From positions 1-64,000 of IMG/VR virus record IMGVR_UViG_3300020810_001156: a stretch of 64,000 nucleotides of DNA, one strand, 5' to 3'. Both the position numbers and the translations under genes were made by a program. The first letter of the stretch is position 1. Each line of letters begins with the position of its first letter. The notes under the pieces are model-generated. The model saw nothing but the letters and a program-made list of their open reading frames with translations. It was not told where the DNA came from and did not search any database. Shown piece by piece: positions 9,658 to 49,229 of this stretch.

Positions 9658-10728
9658 ATGAATTACGCACTAACTTACGATGATATTCAATTAGTACCAG
9701 CTTTTTCGAATATCAAATCAAGACAAAATATCAAACTTCATACGATGTTGAGTGAAAGATATGGATTATTAAATCCTATCGTAGCTTCACCAATGGATAC
9801 AGTTTGTGAGTTTGAAATGGCTTACAAAATGGCTGAATTGGGTGGAGTTGGGTGTATTCACCGATTTATGAGTATCAAAGAACAAAGAGATATCGTAGAG
9901 AGGTTGTATGAAGCAATCTATGCCGATGAATTTGGTATTGCTGAACAATGGGGTGTAATGTACGATGATTGGCATGGTGAAATCAAAGCCGTACCTATCA
10001 TGGCTGCTATTGGAGTTCAAAATGAAGATAAGGATAGAGCTTCGGCATTGGTTGAAGCTGGTGCAAATGTTTTACTGATTGATGTGGCTCATGGAGACCA
10101 CCAAAATGTGTTAGATATGATTCATTGGTGTGTAACTCAAGATGATTTTCAAAATGTAGATATCATAGCTGGAAATATTGCAACTGCAGAGGCAGCAGAG
10201 TTACTCCAAACTTATGGAGTACATGGTTTGAGAGTTGGAATTGGTGGAGGTTCACTTTGTACAACGAGAATTAAAACTGGGTTTGGTGTTCCAAATGTAA
10301 CTTCATTAGAGGATATCGCTAGGGTATCGAATGTACCTATTATGGCTGATGGTGGTTTGAGAACTTCTGGTGATATCTCAAAAGCACTAGCAGTTGGAGC
10401 TGATTGTGTAATGTTGGGTTCACTATTAGCTGGAACTGATGAAGCGCCTGGTCAAATTGTTGAAACTCCAAACGGATTGTACAAAAGATATAGAGGTTCA
10501 GCATCATTGGAAACTAAAGTAACTCACGGACAAGCTGCGAGAAATGTTGAAGGTGAAGCAACAACAATTCCATATAAAGGTGGAGTTAAATTTATTATCA
10601 ATGGATTATTGGATGGAGTGAAATCAGCCCTAAGTTATGCTGGGGCTAGTGATTTAAAAAATTATAATCCAAAATATGTAGTAGTTACCAATGCTGGACA
10701 GAATGAAGCTAAACCGCATCTTTTATGA
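9658..10728 (+). CDS. guaB: IMP dehydrogenase / GMP reductase family protein, no CBS domains
   Basis: ALTYDDIQLVP, ASPMDTV, IDVAHG, GNIAT, GIGGGSLCTTR (catalytic Cys), ADGG; IMPDH versus GMPR not resolved. Confidence 0.85.
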   Translation: MNYALTYDDIQLVPAFSNIKSRQNIKLHTMLSERYGLLNPIVASPMDTVCEFEMAYKMAELGGVGCIHRFMSIKEQRDIVERLYEAIYADEFGIAEQWGVMYDDWHGEIKAVPIMAAIGVQNEDKDRASALVEAGANVLLIDVAHGDHQNVLDMIHWCVTQDDFQNVDIIAGNIATAEAAELLQTYGVHGLRVGIGGGSLCTTRIKTGFGVPNVTSLEDIARVSNVPIMADGGLRTSGDISKALAVGADCVMLGSLLAGTDEAPGQIVETPNGLYKRYRGSASLETKVTHGQAARNVEGEATTIPYKGGVKFIINGLLDGVKSALSYAGASDLKNYNPKYVVVTNAGQNEAKPHLL

Positions 10729-12548: not shown

Positions 12549-12937
12549 GTACCTTTCCTACCGATTTCCAAAAAGTAGTAGATTTCTTAAAATACTACGA
12601 TGTGAATGTAATGATTGATTCAGTTAGTTGTTATATTAAAACCGATGATGAACAAACCATTTGCATTCACCACAATTATAACTTAGAGAAAAACGGATTA
12701 ATTACCCTACTTCACGAAGCTGGACATGTATTACAATCCAATGATAATGGAGTGTGTAATCATTACAAAAATGTGGATGATATGGAAAATCCCAAAGAGT
12801 ACAATATGTACCAATTTATGAATGAGTTGGATGCTTGGAATAGAGGTGAGGAATTGATTGAAATGTTGGACTTGGATGTTGATTCAAATAGATTCCATAA
12901 ACAAAGAGAGGAAGCGCTCTTAACTTATTATGTTTAG
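12545..12937 (+). CDS. HExxH zincin-like metallopeptidase (ImmA/IrrE-like)
   Basis: LITLLHEAGH followed by E.DAW..G. Confidence 0.6.
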   Translation: MSTFPTDFQKVVDFLKYYDVNVMIDSVSCYIKTDDEQTICIHHNYNLEKNGLITLLHEAGHVLQSNDNGVCNHYKNVDDMENPKEYNMYQFMNELDAWNRGEELIEMLDLDVDSNRFHKQREEALLTYYV

Positions 12938-13949: not shown

Positions 13950-13954
13950 TAAAG

Positions 13955-13984
13955 AATCCACCCCAAAAAGGTGGGTTTTCTTTT
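13955..13984 (+). terminator. intrinsic terminator
   Basis: AATCCACC/GGTGGGTT hairpin followed by TTCTTTT. Confidence 0.7.
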
Positions 13985-14045
13985 GCGCCAAATCCAAATG
14001 AACTCGAAGTTGGAAAACCAAGATAAAAATAATATAGCTAAGAAT
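13985..14045. repeat. imperfect ~60-bp repeat, copy 1 (copy 2 at 16530-16585)
   Basis: GCGC-AAATC..AAC-CGAAG-TGGA..AAG-TAAAAATAA-ATAGCTAAGAAT shared; each copy follows a terminator. Confidence 0.65.
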
Positions 14046-14141
14046 AGTAGTAATCAATATAGTATAGGTATAGAAGATATATAAGATAAAGAATAAGAAG
14101 ATATAATAGTTATATTAAATAACCCCAAATACCACCCAGCT

Positions 14142-14297
14142 ATGATAACTCAGAAAGAACTCATCCATATGTACTATAAGATATGTGATATAGAAGAGGA
14201 ATTGTATGTTAACCCCTTCCCCAACGATAAGATACTCCTCCTGACCGAAGATTTAAAAAAGACTATCATCAATAGAGTAGATGAAGCTCCTAAATAA
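14142..14297 (+). CDS. small hypothetical protein (51 aa)
   Basis: MITQKELIHMYYKICDIEEELY...; not in ORF track. Confidence 0.45.
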   Translation: MITQKELIHMYYKICDIEEELYVNPFPNDKILLLTEDLKKTIINRVDEAPK

Positions 14298-14426
14298 TCA
14301 AACCATCAACACTCTTTTACCATAAGAGTTAGGATAATGACACCCCCATATAATTAACTATACCGATATACACCTATAAGCATATATTCTAATACTTATA
14401 TACAAATAGGTTTATTTCTATCTCTA

Positions 14427-14462
14427 TCCCACTACCTACCACTTTCCCCCACTTTTCCCCAC
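14427..14462 (-). promoter_or_regulatory. four GTGG boxes at exact 10-bp period (MraZ-operator-like array)
   Basis: Minus strand reads GTGGGG-AAAA-GTGGGG-GAAA-GTGGTA-GGTA-GTGGGA. Confidence 0.55.
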
Positions 14463-14665
14463 CTAATAACATACTACTAAATAATTAGCTAAGAAAAGTA
14501 CTCTATCACCATGGTAGAGGGGCTTGTGTGTGTGTTGGTATCGCTGCAAATTTTCCTGGCCCTGATTCTGATACTATCTCCGAGCCACCTTACCCCTTTA
14601 ACCCCTAAATCCCATAAGCGCTTAGAGACAATCCCTGAGAGAGCTTGGAAATTGGGCTGTAAGAG

Positions 14666-14697
14666 CTAATATACAAAAAAGAAATGAGATATACAAG
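14666..14697 (-). promoter_or_regulatory. Bacteroidota sigma-A-type promoter, minus strand, firing into non-coding DNA
   Basis: Reverse complement: CTTG-N20-TATATTAG. Confidence 0.7.
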
Positions 14698-14707
14698 CCA
14701 TATGGCC

Positions 14708-14810
14708 TGACAATTCGTCATTGTGGATAACTTTTTTTATTAACACCAAAATGTGGATAACTTTTCAAGCGGCTGTTGATAACTTTTTAGCTTGATTTGA
14801 CAAATTGTCA
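14708..14810. promoter_or_regulatory. three co-oriented DnaA boxes flanked by two TGACAAnTTGTCA-type palindromes
   Basis: TGTGGATAA at 14722 and 14752, TGTTGATAA at 14774, each followed by CTTTT; palindromes at 14708-14720 (imperfect) and 14798-14810. Confidence 0.75.
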
Positions 14811-14819
14811 TACAAATAA

Positions 14820-14851
14820 TTTGGATATATCATTTATTTTTCGTATCTTTA
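14820..14851 (+). promoter_or_regulatory. Bacteroidota sigma-A-type promoter upstream of candidate sRNA
   Basis: TTTG 14820-14823, TATCTTTA 14844-14851. Confidence 0.65.
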
Positions 14852-14854
14852 AGG

Positions 14855-14925
14855 GTGGCTGGGTGGGAGTAGTATAGGGGAAAACAGCGAATACTGCCGC
14901 AGGAATTAGATTCACCGGCAGTCAC
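14855..14925 (+). ncRNA. candidate structured small RNA
   Basis: Own promoter; closing stem GTGGCTG/CAGTCAC plus GGTG/CACC; inner stem GTAGTAT/ATACTGC; no ORF. Confidence 0.4.
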
Positions 14926-14959
14926 GACAAAAAAAATATTAAAAAAAAGTGAGAAAAGG

Positions 14960-15006
14960 CTTGCATGATTCAAATTAATTTCGTATATTAGTACTGTAAT
15001 TGAGAG
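14960..15006 (+). promoter_or_regulatory. Bacteroidota sigma-A-type promoter with TACTGTAATTGAGAG tail
   Basis: CTTG 14960-14963, TATATTAG 14984-14991. Confidence 0.8.
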
Positions 15007-15029: not shown

Positions 15030-15605
15030 ATGAGTAAGAAATTCAAATTTAAATTAAACGGAATGGAGTTCTCCCTTCCTATTAAACACCTAAAGACAAC
15101 TGATTGGAATGGTAACCCTACCAAGCCTGAGATTTCGATTAACCACTCAGCTGGGTCAAACCTTCTGAAACAATATGTGAAAGCGAAGTATCCCAAAGTT
15201 ACGGTGATGGTTTCATCATCTATCTTCTCTATGGGTAACTCAGTTGATGTGTATATTACTGATGAGGTTGGTAATCCAGTTGATAAATCTATTGTAGAAG
15301 ATGTTCAAGCTTTCGGTAACCAATTTGTTTATGGTCAGTTCAACGGAATGATTGATATGTATGAACACAAAGAGTGTGGTGCTACCTCTGAAAGTGGTAC
15401 TACTATCACTGGTAACATCAAATACCTTCACGTTCAGAATCGTGCGAAGCACGCATCTCTTCCTGATGTATGTAGAATGTTGGTTGAGATGACAACTACT
15501 GAGAACTATGTGTTTGGAAAAGTAAGTGTTGAAAAAGCTATTGAACATGCTAAGAGTTTCGGCGCTAGTGAGAATAATATTAACAAAGCTCTAAAATTGA
15601 TATAA
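15030..15605 (+). CDS. LPD29 (large polyvalent protein-associated domain 29)-like protein
   Basis: LLKQYVKAKYPKVTVMVSSSIFSMGNSVDVY...F.YGQFNGMIDMYE matches the LPD29 pattern. Confidence 0.7.
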   Translation: MSKKFKFKLNGMEFSLPIKHLKTTDWNGNPTKPEISINHSAGSNLLKQYVKAKYPKVTVMVSSSIFSMGNSVDVYITDEVGNPVDKSIVEDVQAFGNQFVYGQFNGMIDMYEHKECGATSESGTTITGNIKYLHVQNRAKHASLPDVCRMLVEMTTTENYVFGKVSVEKAIEHAKSFGASENNINKALKLI

Positions 15606-15871: not shown

Positions 15872-15943
15872 GCGGGAGAAGCGTTAAGAGAAACGTGCCG
15901 GGCTTCCAGCTCGGAGAAGGTGGGGCGGTTCCATCCTCCCGCT
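15872..15943 (+). tRNA. tRNA-Gly(UCC) with non-canonical D and T loops
   Basis: Acceptor GCGGGAG/CTCCCGC; D stem GCGT/ACGT; anticodon stem CCGGG/CTCGG with loop CTTCCAG; T stem GGTGG/CCATC; U73; no encoded CCA. Confidence 0.75.
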
Positions 15944-16009
15944 CAACTGATGATGAGATTAAGGATAACTCGGCTCCGAATGGGGAGGTAGCATCATCAA
16001 ACACATATT

Positions 16010-16297
16010 ATGGGAGAACAAGTAGCAAACAATAGAGAAATGCAGGAAGTGATGTATCTCCGCCAAGAAGATGGAAAGTGGTACATCCTATCCGAACCTA
16101 AATCACCTGGCCTGGTGAAGAAGGAATACTTACCTATTGGCAATCGGCTTGTATATCCTAAGAAGTGGGGAAGGAAGAAAGCTGCTGAGGTACTACTATC
16201 CGCACTTATATCAGATTCGGAAAAGGTGTGTGAAAAAGCTAATGAGAGGTTGGAAGTACTAAGAGGATTAACTGCTGAGGTTAGTGAATGGAAGTAA
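16010..16297 (+). CDS. hypothetical protein
   Basis: ORF track. Confidence 0.7.
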   Translation: MGEQVANNREMQEVMYLRQEDGKWYILSEPKSPGLVKKEYLPIGNRLVYPKKWGRKKAAEVLLSALISDSEKVCEKANERLEVLRGLTAEVSEWK

Positions 16298-16467
16298 TGA
16301 CTTATTATCAGATACGGAAGAAAGTAGAAGAATCAGGTAAGTCACTGGAAGTCAGAGAGTTAGCTAAGCAGTTACAACTTCAACTATCGGAACCTGGAGC
16401 TAATATCCCATTTAAAGATGCATATGAAATGGCCTATAATGAGATACTCCTACAAAGGGTTTACTAA
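16297..16467 (+). CDS. small hypothetical protein (56 aa)
   Basis: TAATG overlap; MTYYQIRKKVEESG... Confidence 0.55.
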   Translation: MTYYQIRKKVEESGKSLEVRELAKQLQLQLSEPGANIPFKDAYEMAYNEILLQRVY

Positions 16468-16500
16468 ATAAGGGTTATAGTAGTGGGTTGAGGTTACTAA

Positions 16501-16528
16501 GGGAGTGAGGAATCGCTCCCTTTTTTTA
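16501..16528 (+). terminator. intrinsic terminator
   Basis: GGGAGTGA-GGAA-TCGCTCCC followed by T7. Confidence 0.85.
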
Positions 16529-16529
16529 T

Positions 16530-16585
16530 GCGCAAATCTCAAACCGAAGCTGGACAAATAAGCTAAAAATAAAATAGCTAAGAAT
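16530..16585. repeat. imperfect ~60-bp repeat, copy 2 (copy 1 at 13985-14045)
   Basis: Shared core ends in TAAAAATAAAATAGCTAAGAAT. Confidence 0.65.
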
Positions 16586-16630
16586 CCCTATACTATACAT
16601 AAGAGAATATATACTATACTTATACTCACT

Positions 16631-16780
16631 ATGACAACAAAGAAAACACATAGTATATACCACAACACTCAGAACACTATAAAGTGTTACCATTGTAATT
16701 GGGAATGGGAGAGTGGGGCTTTAACCCTATACGAATGCCCCCATTGTGGAAAAGTGGCTGAAGGTATTTCCCAGCTCTAG
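16631..16780 (+). CDS. small zinc-ribbon protein (49 aa)
   Basis: KCYHCNWEW...YECPHCGK (CxxC...CxxC). Confidence 0.6.
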   Translation: MTTKKTHSIYHNTQNTIKCYHCNWEWESGALTLYECPHCGKVAEGISQL

Positions 16781-16990
16781 CGAGCGTAAGCGAGCGGAGG
16801 AGACAGGGGAGACCCCCCACCCCCCTTAGACAGGTTTCTTGTTGCTACCGGATTTGGAAACGCTCTCAAGCCGGGTCTGGTCCGTTTTCGCCTCGAGCCC
16901 GGTTTTTTCCGGTATAGAAAAAATACCCTTTGATACCCCTTCGGTGTATCCTAAGAGGATATCAAACTCGGATTTGTGAAGGGAGCCATT
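16779..16990. other. GC-rich non-coding structured island (candidate packaging/terminus or origin site)
   Basis: AGCGAGCG x2, AGACAGG x2, GGGGAGACCCCCCACCCCCC, CCGGG/CCCGG stem, UUCG hairpin; contrasts with AT-rich surroundings. Confidence 0.45.
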
Positions 16991-17009
16991 TTTATTTTAC
17001 CTCATTTTA

Positions 17010-17041
17010 TTTGGAATTCTCATTTATTTTTTGTATATTTG
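17010..17041 (+). promoter_or_regulatory. Bacteroidota sigma-A-type promoter
   Basis: TTTG 17010-17013, TATATTTG 17034-17041. Confidence 0.8.
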
Positions 17042-17064
17042 TATAAACTAAAATTTAAGAAGAT

Positions 17065-17223
17065 ATGCAAGCATTGACATTAAAAGAAACAATCAACATT
17101 GGAGGTAAGCAATTTTATCATTATTCATTGGGCGGAAAGTACTTCTCTAAAGAGTGGGTAGTAATTCATGGAATAACCTATTATGATTCAGTAAGAGGTG
17201 AAGAAGATTTTCGAAGAGTATAG
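17065..17223 (+). CDS. small hypothetical protein (52 aa)
   Basis: First ATG after the promoter; MQALTLKETINIGGK... Confidence 0.55.
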   Translation: MQALTLKETINIGGKQFYHYSLGGKYFSKEWVVIHGITYYDSVRGEEDFRRV

Positions 17224-19745: not shown

Positions 19746-20108
19746 ATGAACGAATATGTAGGAACTTTGATGCAGAGTAGAAACCAAACTCACATCTTTC
19801 ACTTACAAACAACATCTTACGCTAAGCATGTAGCGTTACAAGAATACTATGAAGGAATCATTGATTTGATTGATGGATTAGTAGAAGCATATCAAGGTAA
19901 GTACGAAATCATAACTGGGTATAAAATGATTGGTACATTAGAAGATATGAGTGATGAAGGAGATATCACAAACTATATTGAAAAGATAGCAAGATATTGT
20001 GAATTAAAAAGAGAGAAACTTCCACAAGATAATTTCTTAACTAACATCTATGATGATATAGATGTATTACTTCGTTCCACACATTACAAATTATCACAGT
20101 TATCTTAA
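19746..20108 (+). CDS. ferritin/Dps-like four-helix protein (DUF5856-like)
   Basis: HIFHLQT.SYAKH.AL.EYYE.I.DLIDGLVEAYQG motif. Confidence 0.75.
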   Translation: MNEYVGTLMQSRNQTHIFHLQTTSYAKHVALQEYYEGIIDLIDGLVEAYQGKYEIITGYKMIGTLEDMSDEGDITNYIEKIARYCELKREKLPQDNFLTNIYDDIDVLLRSTHYKLSQLS

Positions 20109-20179: not shown

Positions 20180-22900
20180 TTAGAATCTATAAGTTAAACT
20201 TGCGTTCCAAGTTCTACCAAATCCGAACCATACTGAGTTTCTAACATCAACACCATTCCATGTAGTTGAACTAGCATCTGCATGAATGTTAGAGTTAGAT
20301 TCTGCAATATAAACAGCATCGAATAAGTTGTTGATATTAGCTCTCGCAGTAAATTTACCAAACTTACCAGTCAATCCTAAATCAACTAAACCATACGATG
20401 GTAATTTCATCGCACCTAAGTTATCAGGTTGTGTAAACTCCGAATCAGTAATAGAGTAGTCAGCGTATAATCCATCTACAAATCTATAATCTACATCAAC
20501 ATTAAATCTTTTACCTAACTTCTGGTCTACTCCTAAAACAGCTACGAATTGTGCAGCATCACCAACTTTAGCATCTTTAAGGTAAAGAGTACCTGTTCCG
20601 ATTGATTGTTGGTTATCATCAAATAATTCTGCTTCGAAATCTTTAGTATATCTCCAATCACCGATTGATAACATACCTCTGAATCTCGTTGCGTTTGATA
20701 ATTGATACTTACCTTCAAATTCGATACCATTATGTACTACATCGATATCTCTGAATTGTGCAAATCCATCTACACCTTGTTGGTTAGATAAACTTCTACT
20801 AACAAATCTATTACCCCAAGTTGTTGTGTAAGCGTTAATGTTAAACGATACATCTGAACCAATAAAACCATAACCCAATTCAAATGAACGAATTTCTTCG
20901 TTTTGTAAATCTGGATTAATTTCATTAGCAAAGTTAGGGAATACTGCATCAAACTGAGGTTGTCTTGAAATTACACCTGCGTTAAAGAACACATTTGATT
21001 TCTCATCGATATTGTAGTTAGCACCACCCTTTACATATCCACCACCTTGGTTTTGAACATCTGATTCTGGGTTACCTGGTTGGTCAAAATAATCGATTCT
21101 TTGGAATGCTTGGTTAGATAAACCTGCTTGTACTACTGCAGTTAATTTATCTCCCTGATATTCTACTAAACCATTAAGACCTTGCCATCCAACTTTACCA
21201 ACATTGTAGTAATCAATCTTCGGACCGTTTAGACCTGTATTCTGAAAAGGATTTGCTTCAACTAAAGTATTGATGATTTGACCGTTAGAGTTTTTGTTAC
21301 CCGTTGAGTAATAACCATCTAATCCCATTAAATCATTAAGAACTCTATAATGATAACCAGTATAGCTTCTTAAATCAACACCAATAGATGTTTTGAATTT
21401 ACCAAATTGTCCTTCTAAGTTTGAGATACCACCAACCCAGTTGTGTGAGTTCATAGATGCTCTTCTTACCAATACTGTTCTATTTACATTAGAATCTCTG
21501 AATCCATTCGAACCAATAAGTTGTCCTTGGAATGCTGAGATATCACCTGTATATCCTTCAGTAGTTGATTGGTTAGCTGCAACGATTGCATCGAAATCGA
21601 TGAATCCATTTGCATCTCTTGAACCTCTACCATTTTCTAAGTAGTGTTCTGTAAGGTCTTTTCTGAAAGGTAAGATATCAGTTGCAGCTGCACGATAGTT
21701 GTTACCACGAGGACCTGTACCACCACCTCTACCAGCAGAACCATATAATGATGTTGCTAATTTAAGGTTATCTGAAATGTTCCAATCCCAGTTGAAAGTT
21801 GCTAATGGTTTGTTGTAGAAGTTTCTTCTTAAAGAATACTCTTCTCCATTTAGTGTACCACCATTAGAATTCCATCTCTGGTCAATTCCTTCTTCACCAA
21901 AGTTTTGGTAATCTCTAATAGATACCCAAACATCTCTTTGATGGTGCCATTGACCTGCACCTAAGAATGAAAAGTTCAATTCATGGTCTGAACCTTCCGG
22001 TGCGTAACCAACTGCAGCGAAGTAAGTCCATCCTTCACCTGAAGTGTTGTAAACATATCCGTTACCAGCCCACTTAGATAATAAGAAAGATGATGCCCAT
22101 CCTTTATCATTCTTACCTGTGTTGTAAGAAACTCCTGTTTTGGTGTATCCATCGTTACCAACCATTTGAATTACTTTACCACCTTCAGTTTTCTGTGCGG
22201 CTTTAGTAAAAATGGAAACAGTTCCCCCAACTGAAGGAACTGCCAACTTAGATGCACCTAAACCTCTTTGGATTTGGATACCTGATGCTACATCGGTTAA
22301 ACCTTGCCAGTTACTCCAATATACCCATCCGTTCTCCATATCGTTAACGGGTTGTCCGTTAATAAGGAAAGATGTATTTCTTTGGTCAAATCCTCTAAGA
22401 GAGATTCTTGAATCACCATAACCACCACCTTGTTTAGTAGCATAAACCCCTGGAGTTTTATTCATAATTTCAGGGAATTCTTGGTTACCAACCTTTAGAG
22501 AAATCTCAGCTGGTGATATCGATGATACCGCTACTGGAGTTTCTCTTACTTTTGCTACATCAATTACCCCTGATGTAACCACCACTTCAGCTAACTGATT
22601 TAATGCAGTTGGTAAATTTACAATCATATCGTTCACAGCAACAACCTCAGTTGTTTGGAAACCAATAAAAGAAATTACTAAAGTGTTACCAGCGGATGCC
22701 CCAGAAATAGAAAAGAGACCATCAAAATCGGTTGTTGTACCATTTTGGGTCCCTTTGATTACTACCGTTGCGCCTGGTAGGGGTTCATTCGTTTCTGCAT
22801 CTACCACTGTTCCAGTGATTTGTGCGAAACCGGTCATTGAGGTGAAAACCATCAATAACCCAATCAAAAATTGCTTCATAATTGCTTGATTTTTGTTCAT
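20180..22900 (-). CDS. TonB-dependent outer-membrane receptor
   Basis: Signal peptide (FAQ), CarboxypepD-like domain (ITGTVVD..EPLPGATV), plug (SLRGF...INGQP), barrel ending ...SLTYRF. Confidence 0.9.
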   Translation of the reverse strand: MNKNQAIMKQFLIGLLMVFTSMTGFAQITGTVVDAETNEPLPGATVVIKGTQNGTTTDFDGLFSISGASAGNTLVISFIGFQTTEVVAVNDMIVNLPTALNQLAEVVVTSGVIDVAKVRETPVAVSSISPAEISLKVGNQEFPEIMNKTPGVYATKQGGGYGDSRISLRGFDQRNTSFLINGQPVNDMENGWVYWSNWQGLTDVASGIQIQRGLGASKLAVPSVGGTVSIFTKAAQKTEGGKVIQMVGNDGYTKTGVSYNTGKNDKGWASSFLLSKWAGNGYVYNTSGEGWTYFAAVGYAPEGSDHELNFSFLGAGQWHHQRDVWVSIRDYQNFGEEGIDQRWNSNGGTLNGEEYSLRRNFYNKPLATFNWDWNISDNLKLATSLYGSAGRGGGTGPRGNNYRAAATDILPFRKDLTEHYLENGRGSRDANGFIDFDAIVAANQSTTEGYTGDISAFQGQLIGSNGFRDSNVNRTVLVRRASMNSHNWVGGISNLEGQFGKFKTSIGVDLRSYTGYHYRVLNDLMGLDGYYSTGNKNSNGQIINTLVEANPFQNTGLNGPKIDYYNVGKVGWQGLNGLVEYQGDKLTAVVQAGLSNQAFQRIDYFDQPGNPESDVQNQGGGYVKGGANYNIDEKSNVFFNAGVISRQPQFDAVFPNFANEINPDLQNEEIRSFELGYGFIGSDVSFNINAYTTTWGNRFVSRSLSNQQGVDGFAQFRDIDVVHNGIEFEGKYQLSNATRFRGMLSIGDWRYTKDFEAELFDDNQQSIGTGTLYLKDAKVGDAAQFVAVLGVDQKLGKRFNVDVDYRFVDGLYADYSITDSEFTQPDNLGAMKLPSYGLVDLGLTGKFGKFTARANINNLFDAVYIAESNSNIHADASSTTWNGVDVRNSVWFGFGRTWNASLTYRF

Positions 22901-34361: not shown

Positions 34362-34614
34362 TTGTCTTGTCTAAATTTTTATTTTAATTTTTTTATTTAA
34401 CACTTGTCTTGTCTTGCACCGTGTCACTGTGTCCGAAAAATCAAAAAGAATATTTGCTCGGTCCAACAATCGTTTCTGATTGAAGTTTGGAAGCGTTTAG
34501 ACTCATAGCTTCACCTTAGAGTATCGTATGTTCGTATAATACATATAGACCAAAATCACCAAACATAAAAAAAATTTGAACTTTTTTCACTTTTTGAAAA
34601 TTTAGTTGAAAGTG

Positions 34615-34646
34615 TTTGGAATTGTAAAATATTTTTCGTATATTTG
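34615..34646 (+). promoter_or_regulatory. Bacteroidota sigma-A-type promoter
   Basis: TTTG 34615-34618, TATATTTG 34639-34646. Confidence 0.8.
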
Positions 34647-34669
34647 TGGATAAACATCAAATAGAATAT

Positions 34670-41850: not shown

Positions 41851-41890
41851 TGACAAGTTGTCATACAAAATGAAATGGTATGGATTTGGT
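41851..41890 (+). promoter_or_regulatory. palindromic operator TGACAAGTTGTCA plus GG-N10-G element upstream of hsp20
   Basis: TGACAAnTTGTCATACAAA also at 14798; TGGTATGGATTTGGT at 41876-41890. Confidence 0.45.
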
Positions 41891-47996: not shown

Positions 47997-49229
47997 ATGA
48001 ATCGGTTTGCGAAAATATGTTTAGGCATGGCAGGTGCTATTATGTTCACTTTCTTTGCAGTACAAACTTGTATTGTATTTAGATGGTGTGAACCCTCTTA
48101 CTTTCTTGCCGAATTTGGATATGGTTGTGTTATTGCATTCATGCCACCATTCTTCTATGTGGTATATGATTTCATTCGTACTACAAAATTAAAAGAAGCA
48201 AATATTGATTTACAATTAAATGCTATTGATAAATCTAATTTGGTGGTTATGTTGGATATGGATGGGTACATCTTATCAGCAAACAAAAAGTTTTGTAACA
48301 CAATGATGTGTACTGAAAAAGAACTAAAGTACAAACAACATAAAAGAATGGTCCCAAAAGAATATGGTGATAGTTTAGAGTATCACGAATTTTGGGAAAG
48401 GTTAAAGAGAGGTGAAAGTATTACTGGTGAATTTGAAAGAATTGCAAAGGATGGTACATCTCGTTGGTTATTTGGTAACTACACTCCCATCCAAAGTTCA
48501 GATGGTAGTTACAACAAAGTTCTAAAGATAGCAACTGATATTACACTTCAACACGAATCCGAAGTGTTGGTAAATCAGAAAAACTCTTACTTAGAACACG
48601 CTGCGAAGATTCTCCGACACGATATGCATAGTGGTATCAACACATATATGCCAAGAGGATTATCATCATTACAAAGAAGATTATCTGAAGAAAAAATTAA
48701 AGAGTTAAAAATTGATGCTCCACTAAGGATGTTAGCAGAAGGATTGAAACACACACAAAAAGTTTATGCTGGTGTTAAGGAGTTTACAAACTTAGTTAAG
48801 GAAGATGCACAATTAGATATGAAGGAATGTAACTTATCAGAAATATTGAGAAATTACTTATCCTCTACATCTTATGTTTCACAAGTTAAAATAGATAGGT
48901 TACCATTCACTCAAGTAAACGAACCACTCTTTTGTACTGCAATAGATAACTTAATCAGAAATGGATTAAAGTATAATGATAGTAGTACAAAGGTGGTTAA
49001 AATTTATATGGAAAATGATTTTACAATTTGTGTGGAAGATAATGGTAGAGGTATTACTAATGAAGAGTTCATTGAGTTATCTAAACCATATACAAGAAAA
49101 GAAGGACAAAAGGAAGGAGGTTCAGGATTGGGATTAAACATTTGTATCGCAATTTTGAAAGAACATGGTTTTAAGATAACTGCAGAGAAGTTAGACTCTG
49201 GTACAAAATTAAAAATTAAATTAAAATGA
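47997..49229 (+). CDS. membrane PAS-domain sensor histidine kinase
   Basis: Two TM helices; PAS-PAC; H-box LRHDM; N-box DNLIRNGLKY; EDNGRGI; GSGLGL. Confidence 0.9.
   Translation: MNRFAKICLGMAGAIMFTFFAVQTCIVFRWCEPSYFLAEFGYGCVIAFMPPFFYVVYDFIRTTKLKEANIDLQLNAIDKSNLVVMLDMDGYILSANKKFCNTMMCTEKELKYKQHKRMVPKEYGDSLEYHEFWERLKRGESITGEFERIAKDGTSRWLFGNYTPIQSSDGSYNKVLKIATDITLQHESEVLVNQKNSYLEHAAKILRHDMHSGINTYMPRGLSSLQRRLSEEKIKELKIDAPLRMLAEGLKHTQKVYAGVKEFTNLVKEDAQLDMKECNLSEILRNYLSSTSYVSQVKIDRLPFTQVNEPLFCTAIDNLIRNGLKYNDSSTKVVKIYMENDFTICVEDNGRGITNEEFIELSKPYTRKEGQKEGGSGLGLNICIAILKEHGFKITAEKLDSGTKLKIKLK

What the first reader, a model, noticed from the sequence alone, without database searches (positions are those of the whole stretch)
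14722..14782. Three phased DnaA boxes between divergent promoters
Seen: two perfect TGTGGATAA and one TGTTGATAA in the same orientation, each followed by CTTTT, within 61 bp. Established: TTATCCACA is the bacterial DnaA box; clusters mark oriC or titration loci such as datA. Large lytic phages normally replicate without DnaA. Inference: a host-initiator-dependent early origin or a DnaA sink that blocks host re-initiation.
Basis: partly seen in the sequence, partly recalled or inferred. Interest (0 to 1): 0.7.

Follow-up and report, generated by a model that had tools for sequence, protein, structure and literature searches.

The report
Phage copy of host cell-cycle operators
A giant marine phage carries, between two back-to-back promoters, conserved binding sites for the host replication initiator DnaA and, 260 bp away, for the host division regulator MraZ, so it has probably copied the control logic of its host's cell-division promoter to read or disturb the host cell cycle.

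Summary
TGTGGATAACTTTT (14722, 14752) and TGTTGATAACTTTT (14774) are the only three copies of that 14-mer in the 252.6-kb phage genome (0.02 expected). A fourth, inverted box (TTATTAACA) lies at 14738. The boxes sit between two divergent host-type promoters, and five relatives keep this layout.

The 14-mer, flank included, is the natural bacterial DnaA box. Pairs of it mark dnaA-linked loci across many phyla. The phage encodes no DnaA.

The new result is a four-box GTGG array with a 10-bp period at 14429-14462, in the same polarity as the DnaA boxes. It is unique in the genome and conserved in relatives. It nearly equals the MraZ operator upstream of mraZ in Bacteroidia. In those host promoters a DnaA box, often TTATTAACA or TTATCAACA, abuts the operator. 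An unrelated phage lineage carries the same order: DnaA boxes, then a GTGG array.

Best reading: a cis-regulatory module that ties two early phage promoters to host DnaA and MraZ. A decoy for both regulators is a live rival. An origin is a weaker one, since no unwinding element, DnaA-trios or skew signal was found. Binding and function are untested.

The parts
14722..14735 (-). DnaA box 1. Reads TGTGGATAACTTTT on +, which is AAAAGTTATCCACA on -. Perfect 9-mer with the natural flank.
14738..14746 (+). DnaA box 1', inverted relative to the others (TTATTAACA on +). This is the weak variant that also occurs at Bacteroidia mraZ promoters.
14752..14765 (-). DnaA box 2 (TGTGGATAACTTTT on +), perfect 9-mer
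14774..14787 (-). DnaA box 3 (TGTTGATAACTTTT on +, TTATCAACA on -). Second commonest natural variant near bacterial box clusters.
14708..14720 (.). Palindrome TGACAATTCGTCA, centred about -53 of P_left. Probably an operator of an unknown dimeric regulator.
14798..14810 (.). Palindrome TGACAAATTGTCA, centred about -52 of P_right. The same motif lies upstream of promoters at 41851 and 244545.
14668..14696 (-). P_left, a leftward host-type promoter (TTGTAT, 17 nt, TATATT). Predicted start near 14661.
14821..14849 (+). P_right, a rightward host-type promoter (TTGGAT, 17 nt, TATCTT). Predicted start near 14856.
   Evidence: RNA contigs to the right
14466..14667 (-). Body of the leftward non-coding unit. 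It holds conserved sequence blocks, has no ORF and shows no conserved RNA fold. Its length from the promoter to the GTGG array is conserved in five relatives.
14429..14462 (-). Four-box MraZ-operator mimic: GTGG at an exact 10-bp period, four times. Unique in the genome.
14853..14880 (+). G-rich start of the P_right transcript (GGGTGGCTGGGTGGGAG...). The only G-quadruplex-type motif in the genome. Its 5' part is conserved in relatives.
14958..14991 (+). Proximal promoter of the 191-aa gene (TTGCAT, 17 nt, TATATT; 37 bits)
15030..15605 (+). 191-aa LPD29-like early gene, reached by transcripts from P_right. Function unknown.
14142..14297 (+). Conserved 51-aa ORF to the left of the module. RNA contigs in two runs begin at 14119.

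Best explanation
The boxes are binding sites for the host initiator and transcription factor DnaA. There are two consensus and two weaker boxes. They lie in the 124-bp gap between the upstream elements of two back-to-back promoters recognised by the host (Bacteroidota-type) RNA polymerase. They are one half of a conserved module of about 450 bp (14.40-14.88 kb) in the largest non-coding stretch of a T4-like jumbo phage. The other half is a four-box operator for the host division regulator MraZ. It lies about 200 nt downstream of P_left, in the same polarity as the DnaA boxes. That order, DnaA box then GTGG boxes, is the one found at the mraZ (division and cell-wall cluster) promoter of Bacteroidia. 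I propose that the phage has rebuilt its host's cell-cycle control logic in cis. DnaA, bound at about -65 to -130 of both promoters (at -46 and -56 in relatives that lack the palindromes), would set how often P_left and P_right fire. MraZ, bound on its array, would block or modulate the leftward transcript. Early phage output consists of a non-coding leftward RNA of about 250 nt and the G-rich leader that runs into the LPD29-like gene. It would thereby be tied to the replication and division state of the infected cell. Shown here: the motifs, their uniqueness, their conservation, their match to host sites, and the promoters by sequence. Inferred: binding of DnaA and MraZ, the direction of the effect, and the benefit to the phage.
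For: Cluster uniqueness. The extended box is the natural DnaA box. Pairs of it hit more than 120 bacterial genomes, and 45 of 120 loci carry dnaA within 8 kb. Flank preferences are +1 C 69% and +2 T 79%. The TG and TA variants are enriched near bacterial clusters. Two AAAAAGTTATCAACA boxes lie upstream of dnaB in a flavobacterium. The phage has no DnaA, MraZ or AbrB-type protein. Promoters: 42 sites in the genome, both flanking sites among them. The same divergent pair flanks the boxes in L010, L014, L019 and L176. In L010 and L019 the boxes take the place of the palindromes next to the upstream promoter elements. MraZ array: the 17-mer hits 44 of 401 Bacteroidia genomes. In 8 of 8 fetched loci it lies 57-230 nt upstream of mraZ-rsmH. 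A four-box operator with GTG(T/G) is described in PMC12957436. The array is unique in the phage and kept in relatives. Host promoters: 21 forward DnaA-type boxes against 0 for the reversed control in 36 mraZ upstream regions. Nine of them end 2-3 nt before the first GTG box. Recurrence: in an unrelated phage lineage 58 of 107 GTGG arrays have 1-5 forward TTATCCACA boxes upstream, the last one 35-36 nt away. RNA contigs run from about 14878 into the 191-aa gene.
Against: No binding or expression experiment exists. Metatranscriptome contigs at 95% identity or more leave 14470-14837 uncovered, so the P_left transcript is not seen. This is weak evidence, because the contigs are unstranded, break at strain variants and may include DNA. 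P_left is the weakest of the 42 promoter-like sites (16 bits). In the phage the DnaA boxes and the MraZ array are about 260 bp apart. At host promoters they abut, and in the other phage lineage they are 36 nt apart. Number, spacing and orientation of the boxes vary among relatives, which would also suit a decoy. Complete distant relatives have no box cluster. The output RNAs have no known function and no conserved fold.
Confidence: 0.45

Rival explanations
1. Decoy or sink. As the phage genome is amplified, the DnaA boxes and the MraZ operator draw both autoregulated host regulators away from their chromosomal targets (oriC and the dnaA promoter, and the dcw promoter). Alternatively the boxes could change the nucleotide state of DnaA, as datA and DARS do. 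Either way host replication initiation and division-gene expression would be re-set. In this reading the position next to promoters is incidental.
For: Both arrays copy the strongest natural sites of two oligomerising cell-cycle regulators. Number, spacing and orientation of the DnaA boxes are free among relatives. The module lies in non-coding DNA and recurs in unrelated phages, followed by long ORF-free stretches. The phage encodes neither protein.
Against: There are only 3-5 DnaA boxes and one MraZ operator per genome. The flanking divergent promoters are conserved in five relatives, and boxes replace promoter-proximal palindromes at about -50. A pure decoy would not need either. Titration of negatively autoregulated proteins is partly buffered (established knowledge of dnaA and mraZ autoregulation). 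I recognised no IHF site, which datA requires, but I did not scan for one formally.
Confidence: 0.22
2. Replication origin. Divergent transcription supercoils and opens the box region, or the G-rich transcripts form stable R-loops that prime the T4-type replisome. DnaA assists opening or helicase entry.
For: This is the largest non-coding region of the genome. DnaA boxes are origin hallmarks. The replisome is T4-type, and T4 origins are promoters whose transcripts form R-loops (my knowledge: Kreuzer and Brister 2010). The P_right transcript starts with the only G-quadruplex-type motif in the genome, and the leftward transcript is G-rich. The region holds 10-bp repeats and an AT-rich conserved stretch at 14340-14425.
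Against: The 10-bp repeats turn out to be a host MraZ operator, not iterons of a replication protein. I saw no DnaA-trios or unwinding element next to the boxes (by eye). Skew is uninformative. The G-quadruplex count is within shuffle expectation, and the fourth G tract is not conserved. A variant contig lacks 14457-14797. Complete distant relatives have no box cluster. The replication genes lie 150 kb away.
Confidence: 0.15
3. The motifs are sites for phage-encoded proteins that happen to resemble host sites, or they have no present function.
For: About 87% of phage protein families have no known function, so an unrecognised DNA-binding protein cannot be excluded. The neighbouring palindromes change with phage lineage (TGACAAATTGTCA here, TGACACATTGTCA in L008), which suggests a phage-specific regulator acts in the same region.
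Against: Two independent motifs both match host operators, down to the flank and the variant usage. The same pairing and polarity occur in an unrelated phage lineage. Pfam found no DnaA, MraZ or AbrB fold protein in the phage.
Confidence: 0.1

Closest known systems
DnaA-regulated bacterial promoters (dnaA, nrdAB and mioC in E. coli; sda in B. subtilis) and DnaA stimulation of lambda pR
   Same: DnaA boxes lie within about 130 bp upstream of, or between, promoters read by the host polymerase. DnaA acts as a transcription factor. Lambda is a phage precedent (my knowledge: Szalewska-Palasz et al. 1998).
   Different: Here the element is in a strictly T4-like jumbo phage of Bacteroidota. It has 3-5 boxes shared by two divergent promoters that drive non-coding RNA, and it is coupled to a second host operator. 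DnaA dependence has not been tested.
MraZ operator of the mraZ/dcw promoter (four GTG(T/G) boxes; PMC12957436)
   Same: Four GTGG boxes at an exact 10-bp period. By eye, 24 of 25 positions agree with the operator of one sampled Bacteroidia genome (L284). The polarity relative to the DnaA boxes is the same as at host promoters.
   Different: No mraZ or dcw gene follows. The array lies about 200 nt downstream of a promoter rather than over one. It sits in a virus.
Host-regulator sites in T4-like cyanophage promoters (PhoB boxes, NtcA sites)
   Same: A lytic T4-like marine phage wires its own transcription to a host regulator that reports host physiology (my knowledge: Zeng and Chisholm 2012).
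   Different: Those sites sense nutrients and drive auxiliary metabolic genes. Here the regulators are the replication initiator and the division regulator, and the outputs are non-coding.
datA and DARS loci of E. coli
   Same: Small clusters of 3-5 DnaA boxes outside oriC that act on DnaA itself.
   Different: datA needs an IHF site and DARS needs a defined box geometry. Neither requirement was shown here. The geometry varies among relatives, and the cluster lies between promoters.
oriC, and DnaA-dependent plasmid and phage origins (P1 oriR, pSC101)
   Same: A cluster of DnaA boxes near direct repeats and AT-rich DNA in a non-coding region.
   Different: The direct repeats are MraZ boxes, not iterons of a replication protein. 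There are no DnaA-trios, unwinding element or initiator gene. The phage has a T4-type replisome.

Membership tests
DnaA-box cluster | 9-mers matching TTATCCACA or TTWTNCACA | tested here: met
   Two perfect 9-mers (14722, 14752). TTATCAACA (14774) and TTATTAACA (14738) each miss the relaxed consensus at position 6 only. Both variants are enriched near bacterial clusters and used at Bacteroidia promoters.
DnaA-box cluster | At least three boxes close together, beyond chance | tested here: met
   Three or four boxes within 66 bp. The 14-mer is expected 0.018 times per genome and found three times. Three sites within 70 bp occurred in 0 of 60 simulated genomes.
DnaA-box cluster | Bound by DnaA | not testable with these tools
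   Needs a gel-shift or footprint experiment with host DnaA.
oriC-type or DnaA-dependent origin | AT-rich unwinding element or DnaA-trios next to the boxes | tested here: not met
   The boxes are flanked by palindromes and promoters. No repeated trinucleotide trios are visible in 14690-14830. The inter-promoter DNA did not look more AT-rich than the 67% genome average by eye.
oriC-type or DnaA-dependent origin | Strand-composition switch at the site | tested here: inconclusive
   Cumulative GC skew rises along the whole genome because 237 of 242 ORFs are on one strand.
oriC-type or DnaA-dependent origin | Supports initiation of replication | not testable with these tools
   Needs marker-frequency analysis or a mini-replicon test.
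DnaA-regulated promoter | Boxes within or just upstream of a promoter used by the host polymerase | tested here: met
   Box centres lie at -65 to -117 of P_left and -78 to -130 of P_right. In L010 and L019 they lie at -46 and -56.
DnaA-regulated promoter | Transcription changes with DnaA | not testable with these tools
   Needs reporter fusions or infection of DnaA-depleted cells.
MraZ operator | Three or four GTG(T/G) boxes at a period of about 10 bp | tested here: met
   Four boxes at exactly 10 bp, 14429-14462 on the minus strand. Unique in the genome, with none in 30 shuffles. The definition comes from PMC12957436.
MraZ operator | Matches operators that sit upstream of mraZ in the host group | tested here: met
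   The 17-mer is found in 44 of 401 Bacteroidia genomes. In 8 of 8 fetched loci it lies 57-230 nt upstream of mraZ-rsmH.
MraZ operator | Overlaps the promoter it controls | tested here: inconclusive
   The array lies about 200 nt downstream of P_left. No promoter-like site above 11 bits overlaps it.
datA-type DnaA-inactivating locus | IHF site between essential boxes | not tested
   I recognised no WATCAANNNNTTR match by eye in 14700-14800. No formal scan was run.
Structured non-coding RNA | Conserved secondary structure with covariation | tested here: not met
   Rfam gave nothing for 12-18 kb. The fold z-score is -0.2. The five-sequence consensus fold is -8.6 kcal/mol with an unfavourable covariation term.

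The most novel reading that the evidence does not exclude
Lytic phages of several unrelated lineages carry a so far undescribed class of non-coding module. It copies the control region of the host division-gene promoter: DnaA boxes followed, in fixed polarity, by an MraZ operator. Phages would use it either to time their own programme by the host cell cycle or to strip both regulators from the host chromosome. The analysis also shows that Bacteroidia couple replication to division through a DnaA box that abuts the MraZ operator.
Probability: 0.4. Interest if true: 0.85.

Novelty: new variant of a known kind. Interest (0 to 1): 0.72.

Why it matters
Phages are known to borrow host nutrient regulators, and temperate phages use DnaA at their origins. 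A conserved pairing of DnaA and MraZ operators in lytic jumbo phages would mean that phages read, or rewrite, the two master switches of the bacterial cell cycle through DNA sites alone. It offers a directly testable handle: gel shifts, reporter fusions and a plasmid-borne decoy. That handle addresses how large phages sense host growth state, which is an open question for marine phage-host dynamics. It also points to an unreported DnaA input at the dcw promoter of Bacteroidia.

Tried and rejected
- **Known phage DNA:** nucleotide searches of the region against 50,697 phage records gave no match.
- **Known RNA families:** Rfam over 12-18 kb returned only a sub-threshold DUF805 RNA hit elsewhere.
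- **Structured RNA:** the leftward unit folds no better than shuffles and shows no covariation. The rightward leader is only mildly structured (z -2.2).
- **G-quadruplex origin idea:** there is one motif in the genome, shuffles give 0-4, and the fourth G tract is not conserved.
- **Captured host DNA:** BLAST of 14380-14900 against 401 Bacteroidia genomes gave only 26-39-nt matches, one group of which led to the MraZ operator.
- **Conserved block GGCTCGGAGA..GTATCAGAATC as a host motif:** six hits, all with three mismatches, in 151 genomes, which is chance level.
- **Genes beside DnaA-box pairs in 119 other viral contigs:** there is no common family and no replication theme. A recurrent 125-aa neighbour has no informative relative.
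- **Transcript evidence:** metatranscriptome contigs are unstranded and broken at strain variants. They neither show nor exclude the P_left RNA.
- **GC skew for an origin:** uninformative.
- **The 191-aa gene:** it has only a weak LPD29 signal and no solved relative.
- **Literature:** I found no report of DnaA-box clusters in lytic jumbo phages beyond software predictions. I found none of MraZ sites in phages and none of DnaA boxes at mraZ promoters.
- **Complex prediction:** not used, because jobs with DNA receive no verdict.

Full report
**What the window is.** The window is the first 64 kb of a 252,603-bp IMG/VR virus record with 33% G+C, estimated complete. Of 242 long ORFs, 237 lie on the + strand, and GC skew simply follows transcription. 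The phage has a T4-type replication and recombination set:
- a gp43-like family-B polymerase, 52% identical to that of a Microcystis phage, with thousands of T4-like hits;
- a DnaB/gp41-like helicase;
- gp32-like, UvsX-like and exonuclease genes.

A TonB-dependent receptor gene at 20180-22900 (-) is 67-69% identical to receptors of two Bacteroidia genomes. About 40 promoters share the motif ATTTGG..N..TTTCGTATATTTG. That motif is the Bacteroidota sigma-A pattern TTTG / TAnnTTTG (my knowledge). The host is therefore a member of Bacteroidota, most likely a marine or salt-marsh flavobacterium.

**The observation.** The 14-mer TGTKGATAACTTTT occurs three times in the whole genome, all within 66 bp, where 0.018 copies are expected. 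Simulated genomes never reached three TGTKRATAAC sites in 70 bp. A fourth, inverted box (TTATTAACA, 14738-14746) lies between boxes 1 and 2. Window-wide the loose 9-mer is at background, so the signal is the cluster and its flank.

The stretch 13950-15000 is the largest ORF-free region of the genome.

Two 13-bp palindromes bracket the boxes (14708 and 14798). Outside them lie two mirror-image promoters. A matrix built from 23 other promoters of this phage finds only 42 sites above 14 bits in the genome. Of these, 39 are on + and 3 on -, and shuffles reach at most 7.2 bits. P_right scores 25.0 bits and P_left 16.0 bits. The palindromes are centred at about -52 and -53 of the two predicted starts.

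Of those 120 loci, 45 carry dnaA itself within the 8-kb locus. The 308 further perfect boxes in the first 80 of these loci prefer the same flank: +1 C 69%, +2 T 79%, +3 T 59%. After the perfect box, TGTTGATAA is the second and TGTTAATAA the fourth commonest variant near those clusters. In a flavobacterium, two AAAAAGTTATCAACA boxes sit just upstream of a gene whose start I read as dnaB. The phage encodes no DnaA. I conclude that host DnaA is the likely ligand, with a probability of about 0.8.

**Conservation.** Relatives were found through the neighbouring 191-aa gene and through the motif itself. L010, L014, L019/L020 and L176 keep 2-5 boxes between the same divergent promoter pair. The spacers between the boxes cannot be aligned. 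Number, spacing (15-54 bp) and orientation vary, so strict helical phasing is not a property of the element. In L010 and L019 the palindromes are absent and boxes lie at -46 and -56 of the two promoters. Complete but distant relatives have no cluster. A variant contig in a metatranscriptome joins 14456 directly to 14798, which removes the boxes and P_left.

**The second operator.** Left of P_left lies a non-coding unit with conserved sequence blocks. Its length from the promoter is conserved (252-262 nt in five phages). It has no conserved RNA fold and no ORF.

The unit ends in four GTGG boxes at an exact 10-bp period (14429-14462, minus strand). The array is unique in the genome, never appears in shuffles, and is kept in all four relatives.

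A BLAST of the region against 401 Bacteroidia genomes gave only short matches. Several of them fell on this array. The 17-mer CCACTTTCCCCCACTTT, allowing one mismatch, occurs in 44 of 401 genomes, usually once. In 8 of 8 fetched loci it lies 57-230 nt upstream of mraZ followed by rsmH. MraZ is known to bind four GTG(T/G) boxes in its own promoter (PMC12957436). The phage has no MraZ or AbrB-type protein.

**The host promoter has the same grammar.** I examined 36 Bacteroidia mraZ upstream regions.
- Twenty-nine have at least three GTG(T/G) boxes at a 10-bp period.
- DnaA-type boxes in forward orientation number 21, against 0 for the reversed control.
- In nine regions a box ends 2-3 nt before the first GTG box. 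The variants are TTATTAACA four times, TTATCAACA twice, TTTTCCACA twice and TTATCCACA once.

The phage's 'weak' variants are thus the ones used at the host division promoter. The polarity in the phage, forward DnaA boxes then the GTGG array on the minus strand, is the host polarity.

**Recurrence.** None of these sites has mraZ nearby. Of 107 evaluable sites, 58 carry 1-5 forward TTATCCACA boxes in the 400 bp upstream. That is 177 boxes against 2 for the reversed control, and only 5 downstream. The last box lies a fixed 35-36 nt before the array. These contigs share almost no proteins with this phage. The module is followed by 0.6-2.3 kb without ORFs. Separately, more than 120 viral contigs carry pairs of extended DnaA boxes with no dnaA gene nearby, and most of these pairs are intergenic.

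**Interpretation.** The sites are promoter-proximal. Their position relative to two conserved promoters is kept, and in some relatives they replace another operator at about -50. That fits cis-regulation: host DnaA and MraZ would gate P_left and P_right. I give this reading 0.45.

The same facts, plus the free geometry of the boxes, leave room for a decoy that draws both regulators off the host chromosome (0.22).

An origin is less likely (0.15). The repeats are not iterons, no unwinding element or trios are present, the replisome is T4-type, and the element is dispensable in variants and absent in distant relatives. Transcription-primed initiation, as at T4 origins, cannot be excluded. The G-rich start of the P_right transcript is compatible with it.

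**Limits.** RNA contigs cover 14119-14469 and run from about 14878 into the 191-aa gene. They do not cover 14470-14837 at 95% identity or more. They are unstranded and break at strain variants, so they do not settle whether P_left fires. Everything about binding and effect is inference from sequence.

Noticed in passing
window 14429-14462 (-): A four-box GTGG array with a 10-bp period that nearly equals the MraZ operator of Bacteroidia mraZ promoters. It is unique in the phage genome and conserved in relatives. It became part of the main finding.
   Followed up: yes
L411, L414, L416, L417, L421, L430, L436, L288 (Bacteroidia mraZ upstream regions): Host-side pattern: a DnaA-type box ends 2-3 nt before the first MraZ box in 9 of 36 genomes. 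Forward boxes number 21 against 0 for the reversed control. This suggests DnaA input at the dcw promoter, which I did not find described.
   Followed up: partly
L295, L321, L339, L370 and about 55 more IMG/VR loci: An unrelated phage lineage has 3-5 perfect TTATCCACA boxes, a fixed 35-36-nt gap, three AAGTGG boxes, and then 0.6-2.3 kb without ORFs but rich in CCCCAAACC and TTGTCAA repeats.
   Followed up: partly
window 20180-22900 (-): A 906-aa TonB-dependent receptor with a CarboxypepD_reg domain, one of only five minus-strand genes and with its own promoter. It is 67-69% identical to receptors in two Bacteroidia genomes. It is a host-derived gene and a clue to the host.
   Followed up: partly
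window 14708, 14798, 41851; genome 244545: The palindrome TGACAANTTGTCA lies 10-20 nt upstream of the upstream element of four promoters. Relative L008 uses TGACACATTGTCA. It looks like the operator of a lineage-specific regulator that has not been identified.
   Followed up: partly
window 34645-34653: A perfect DnaA box overlaps the TAnnTTTG element of the promoter at 34596-34650 (TATATTTGTGGATAA). It may be chance, since isolated perfect boxes occur at the expected number.
   Followed up: no
window 15895-15945 and 16790-16850: GC-rich islands in a stretch with few long ORFs (16297-17198). RNA contig depth is highest at 16142-16680 (up to 54). No Rfam family matched.
   Followed up: no
window 12742-12809 (+): A sub-threshold Rfam match to DUF805 RNA (33.7 bits, gathering score 51.1, E 0.0025).
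   Followed up: no
window 47997-49229 (+); 9658-10728 (+); 19746-20108 (+): Host-physiology genes in a phage: a PAS-domain histidine kinase, an IMPDH/GMP-reductase family enzyme, and a DUF5856 protein that PHROGs calls a starvation-inducible regulator.
   Followed up: no
window 14456/14798 junction (RNA run X16): A related strain's contig joins the MraZ array directly to the right palindrome and P_right. It lacks 341 bp that hold the left unit body, P_left and all DnaA boxes.
   Followed up: partly
genome 110811-125297, 126219-139991, 142082-153682, 75880-84288 (outside the window): Four giant ORFs of 4828, 4590, 3866 and 2802 aa. Two adjacent Mom-like DNA-modification genes lie at 180366-182116.
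   Followed up: no
L166, L170, L177, L188, L189 and about 15 more IMG/VR loci: Pairs of extended DnaA boxes lie beside a recurrent 125-aa ORF of unknown function in many viral contigs.
   Followed up: partly
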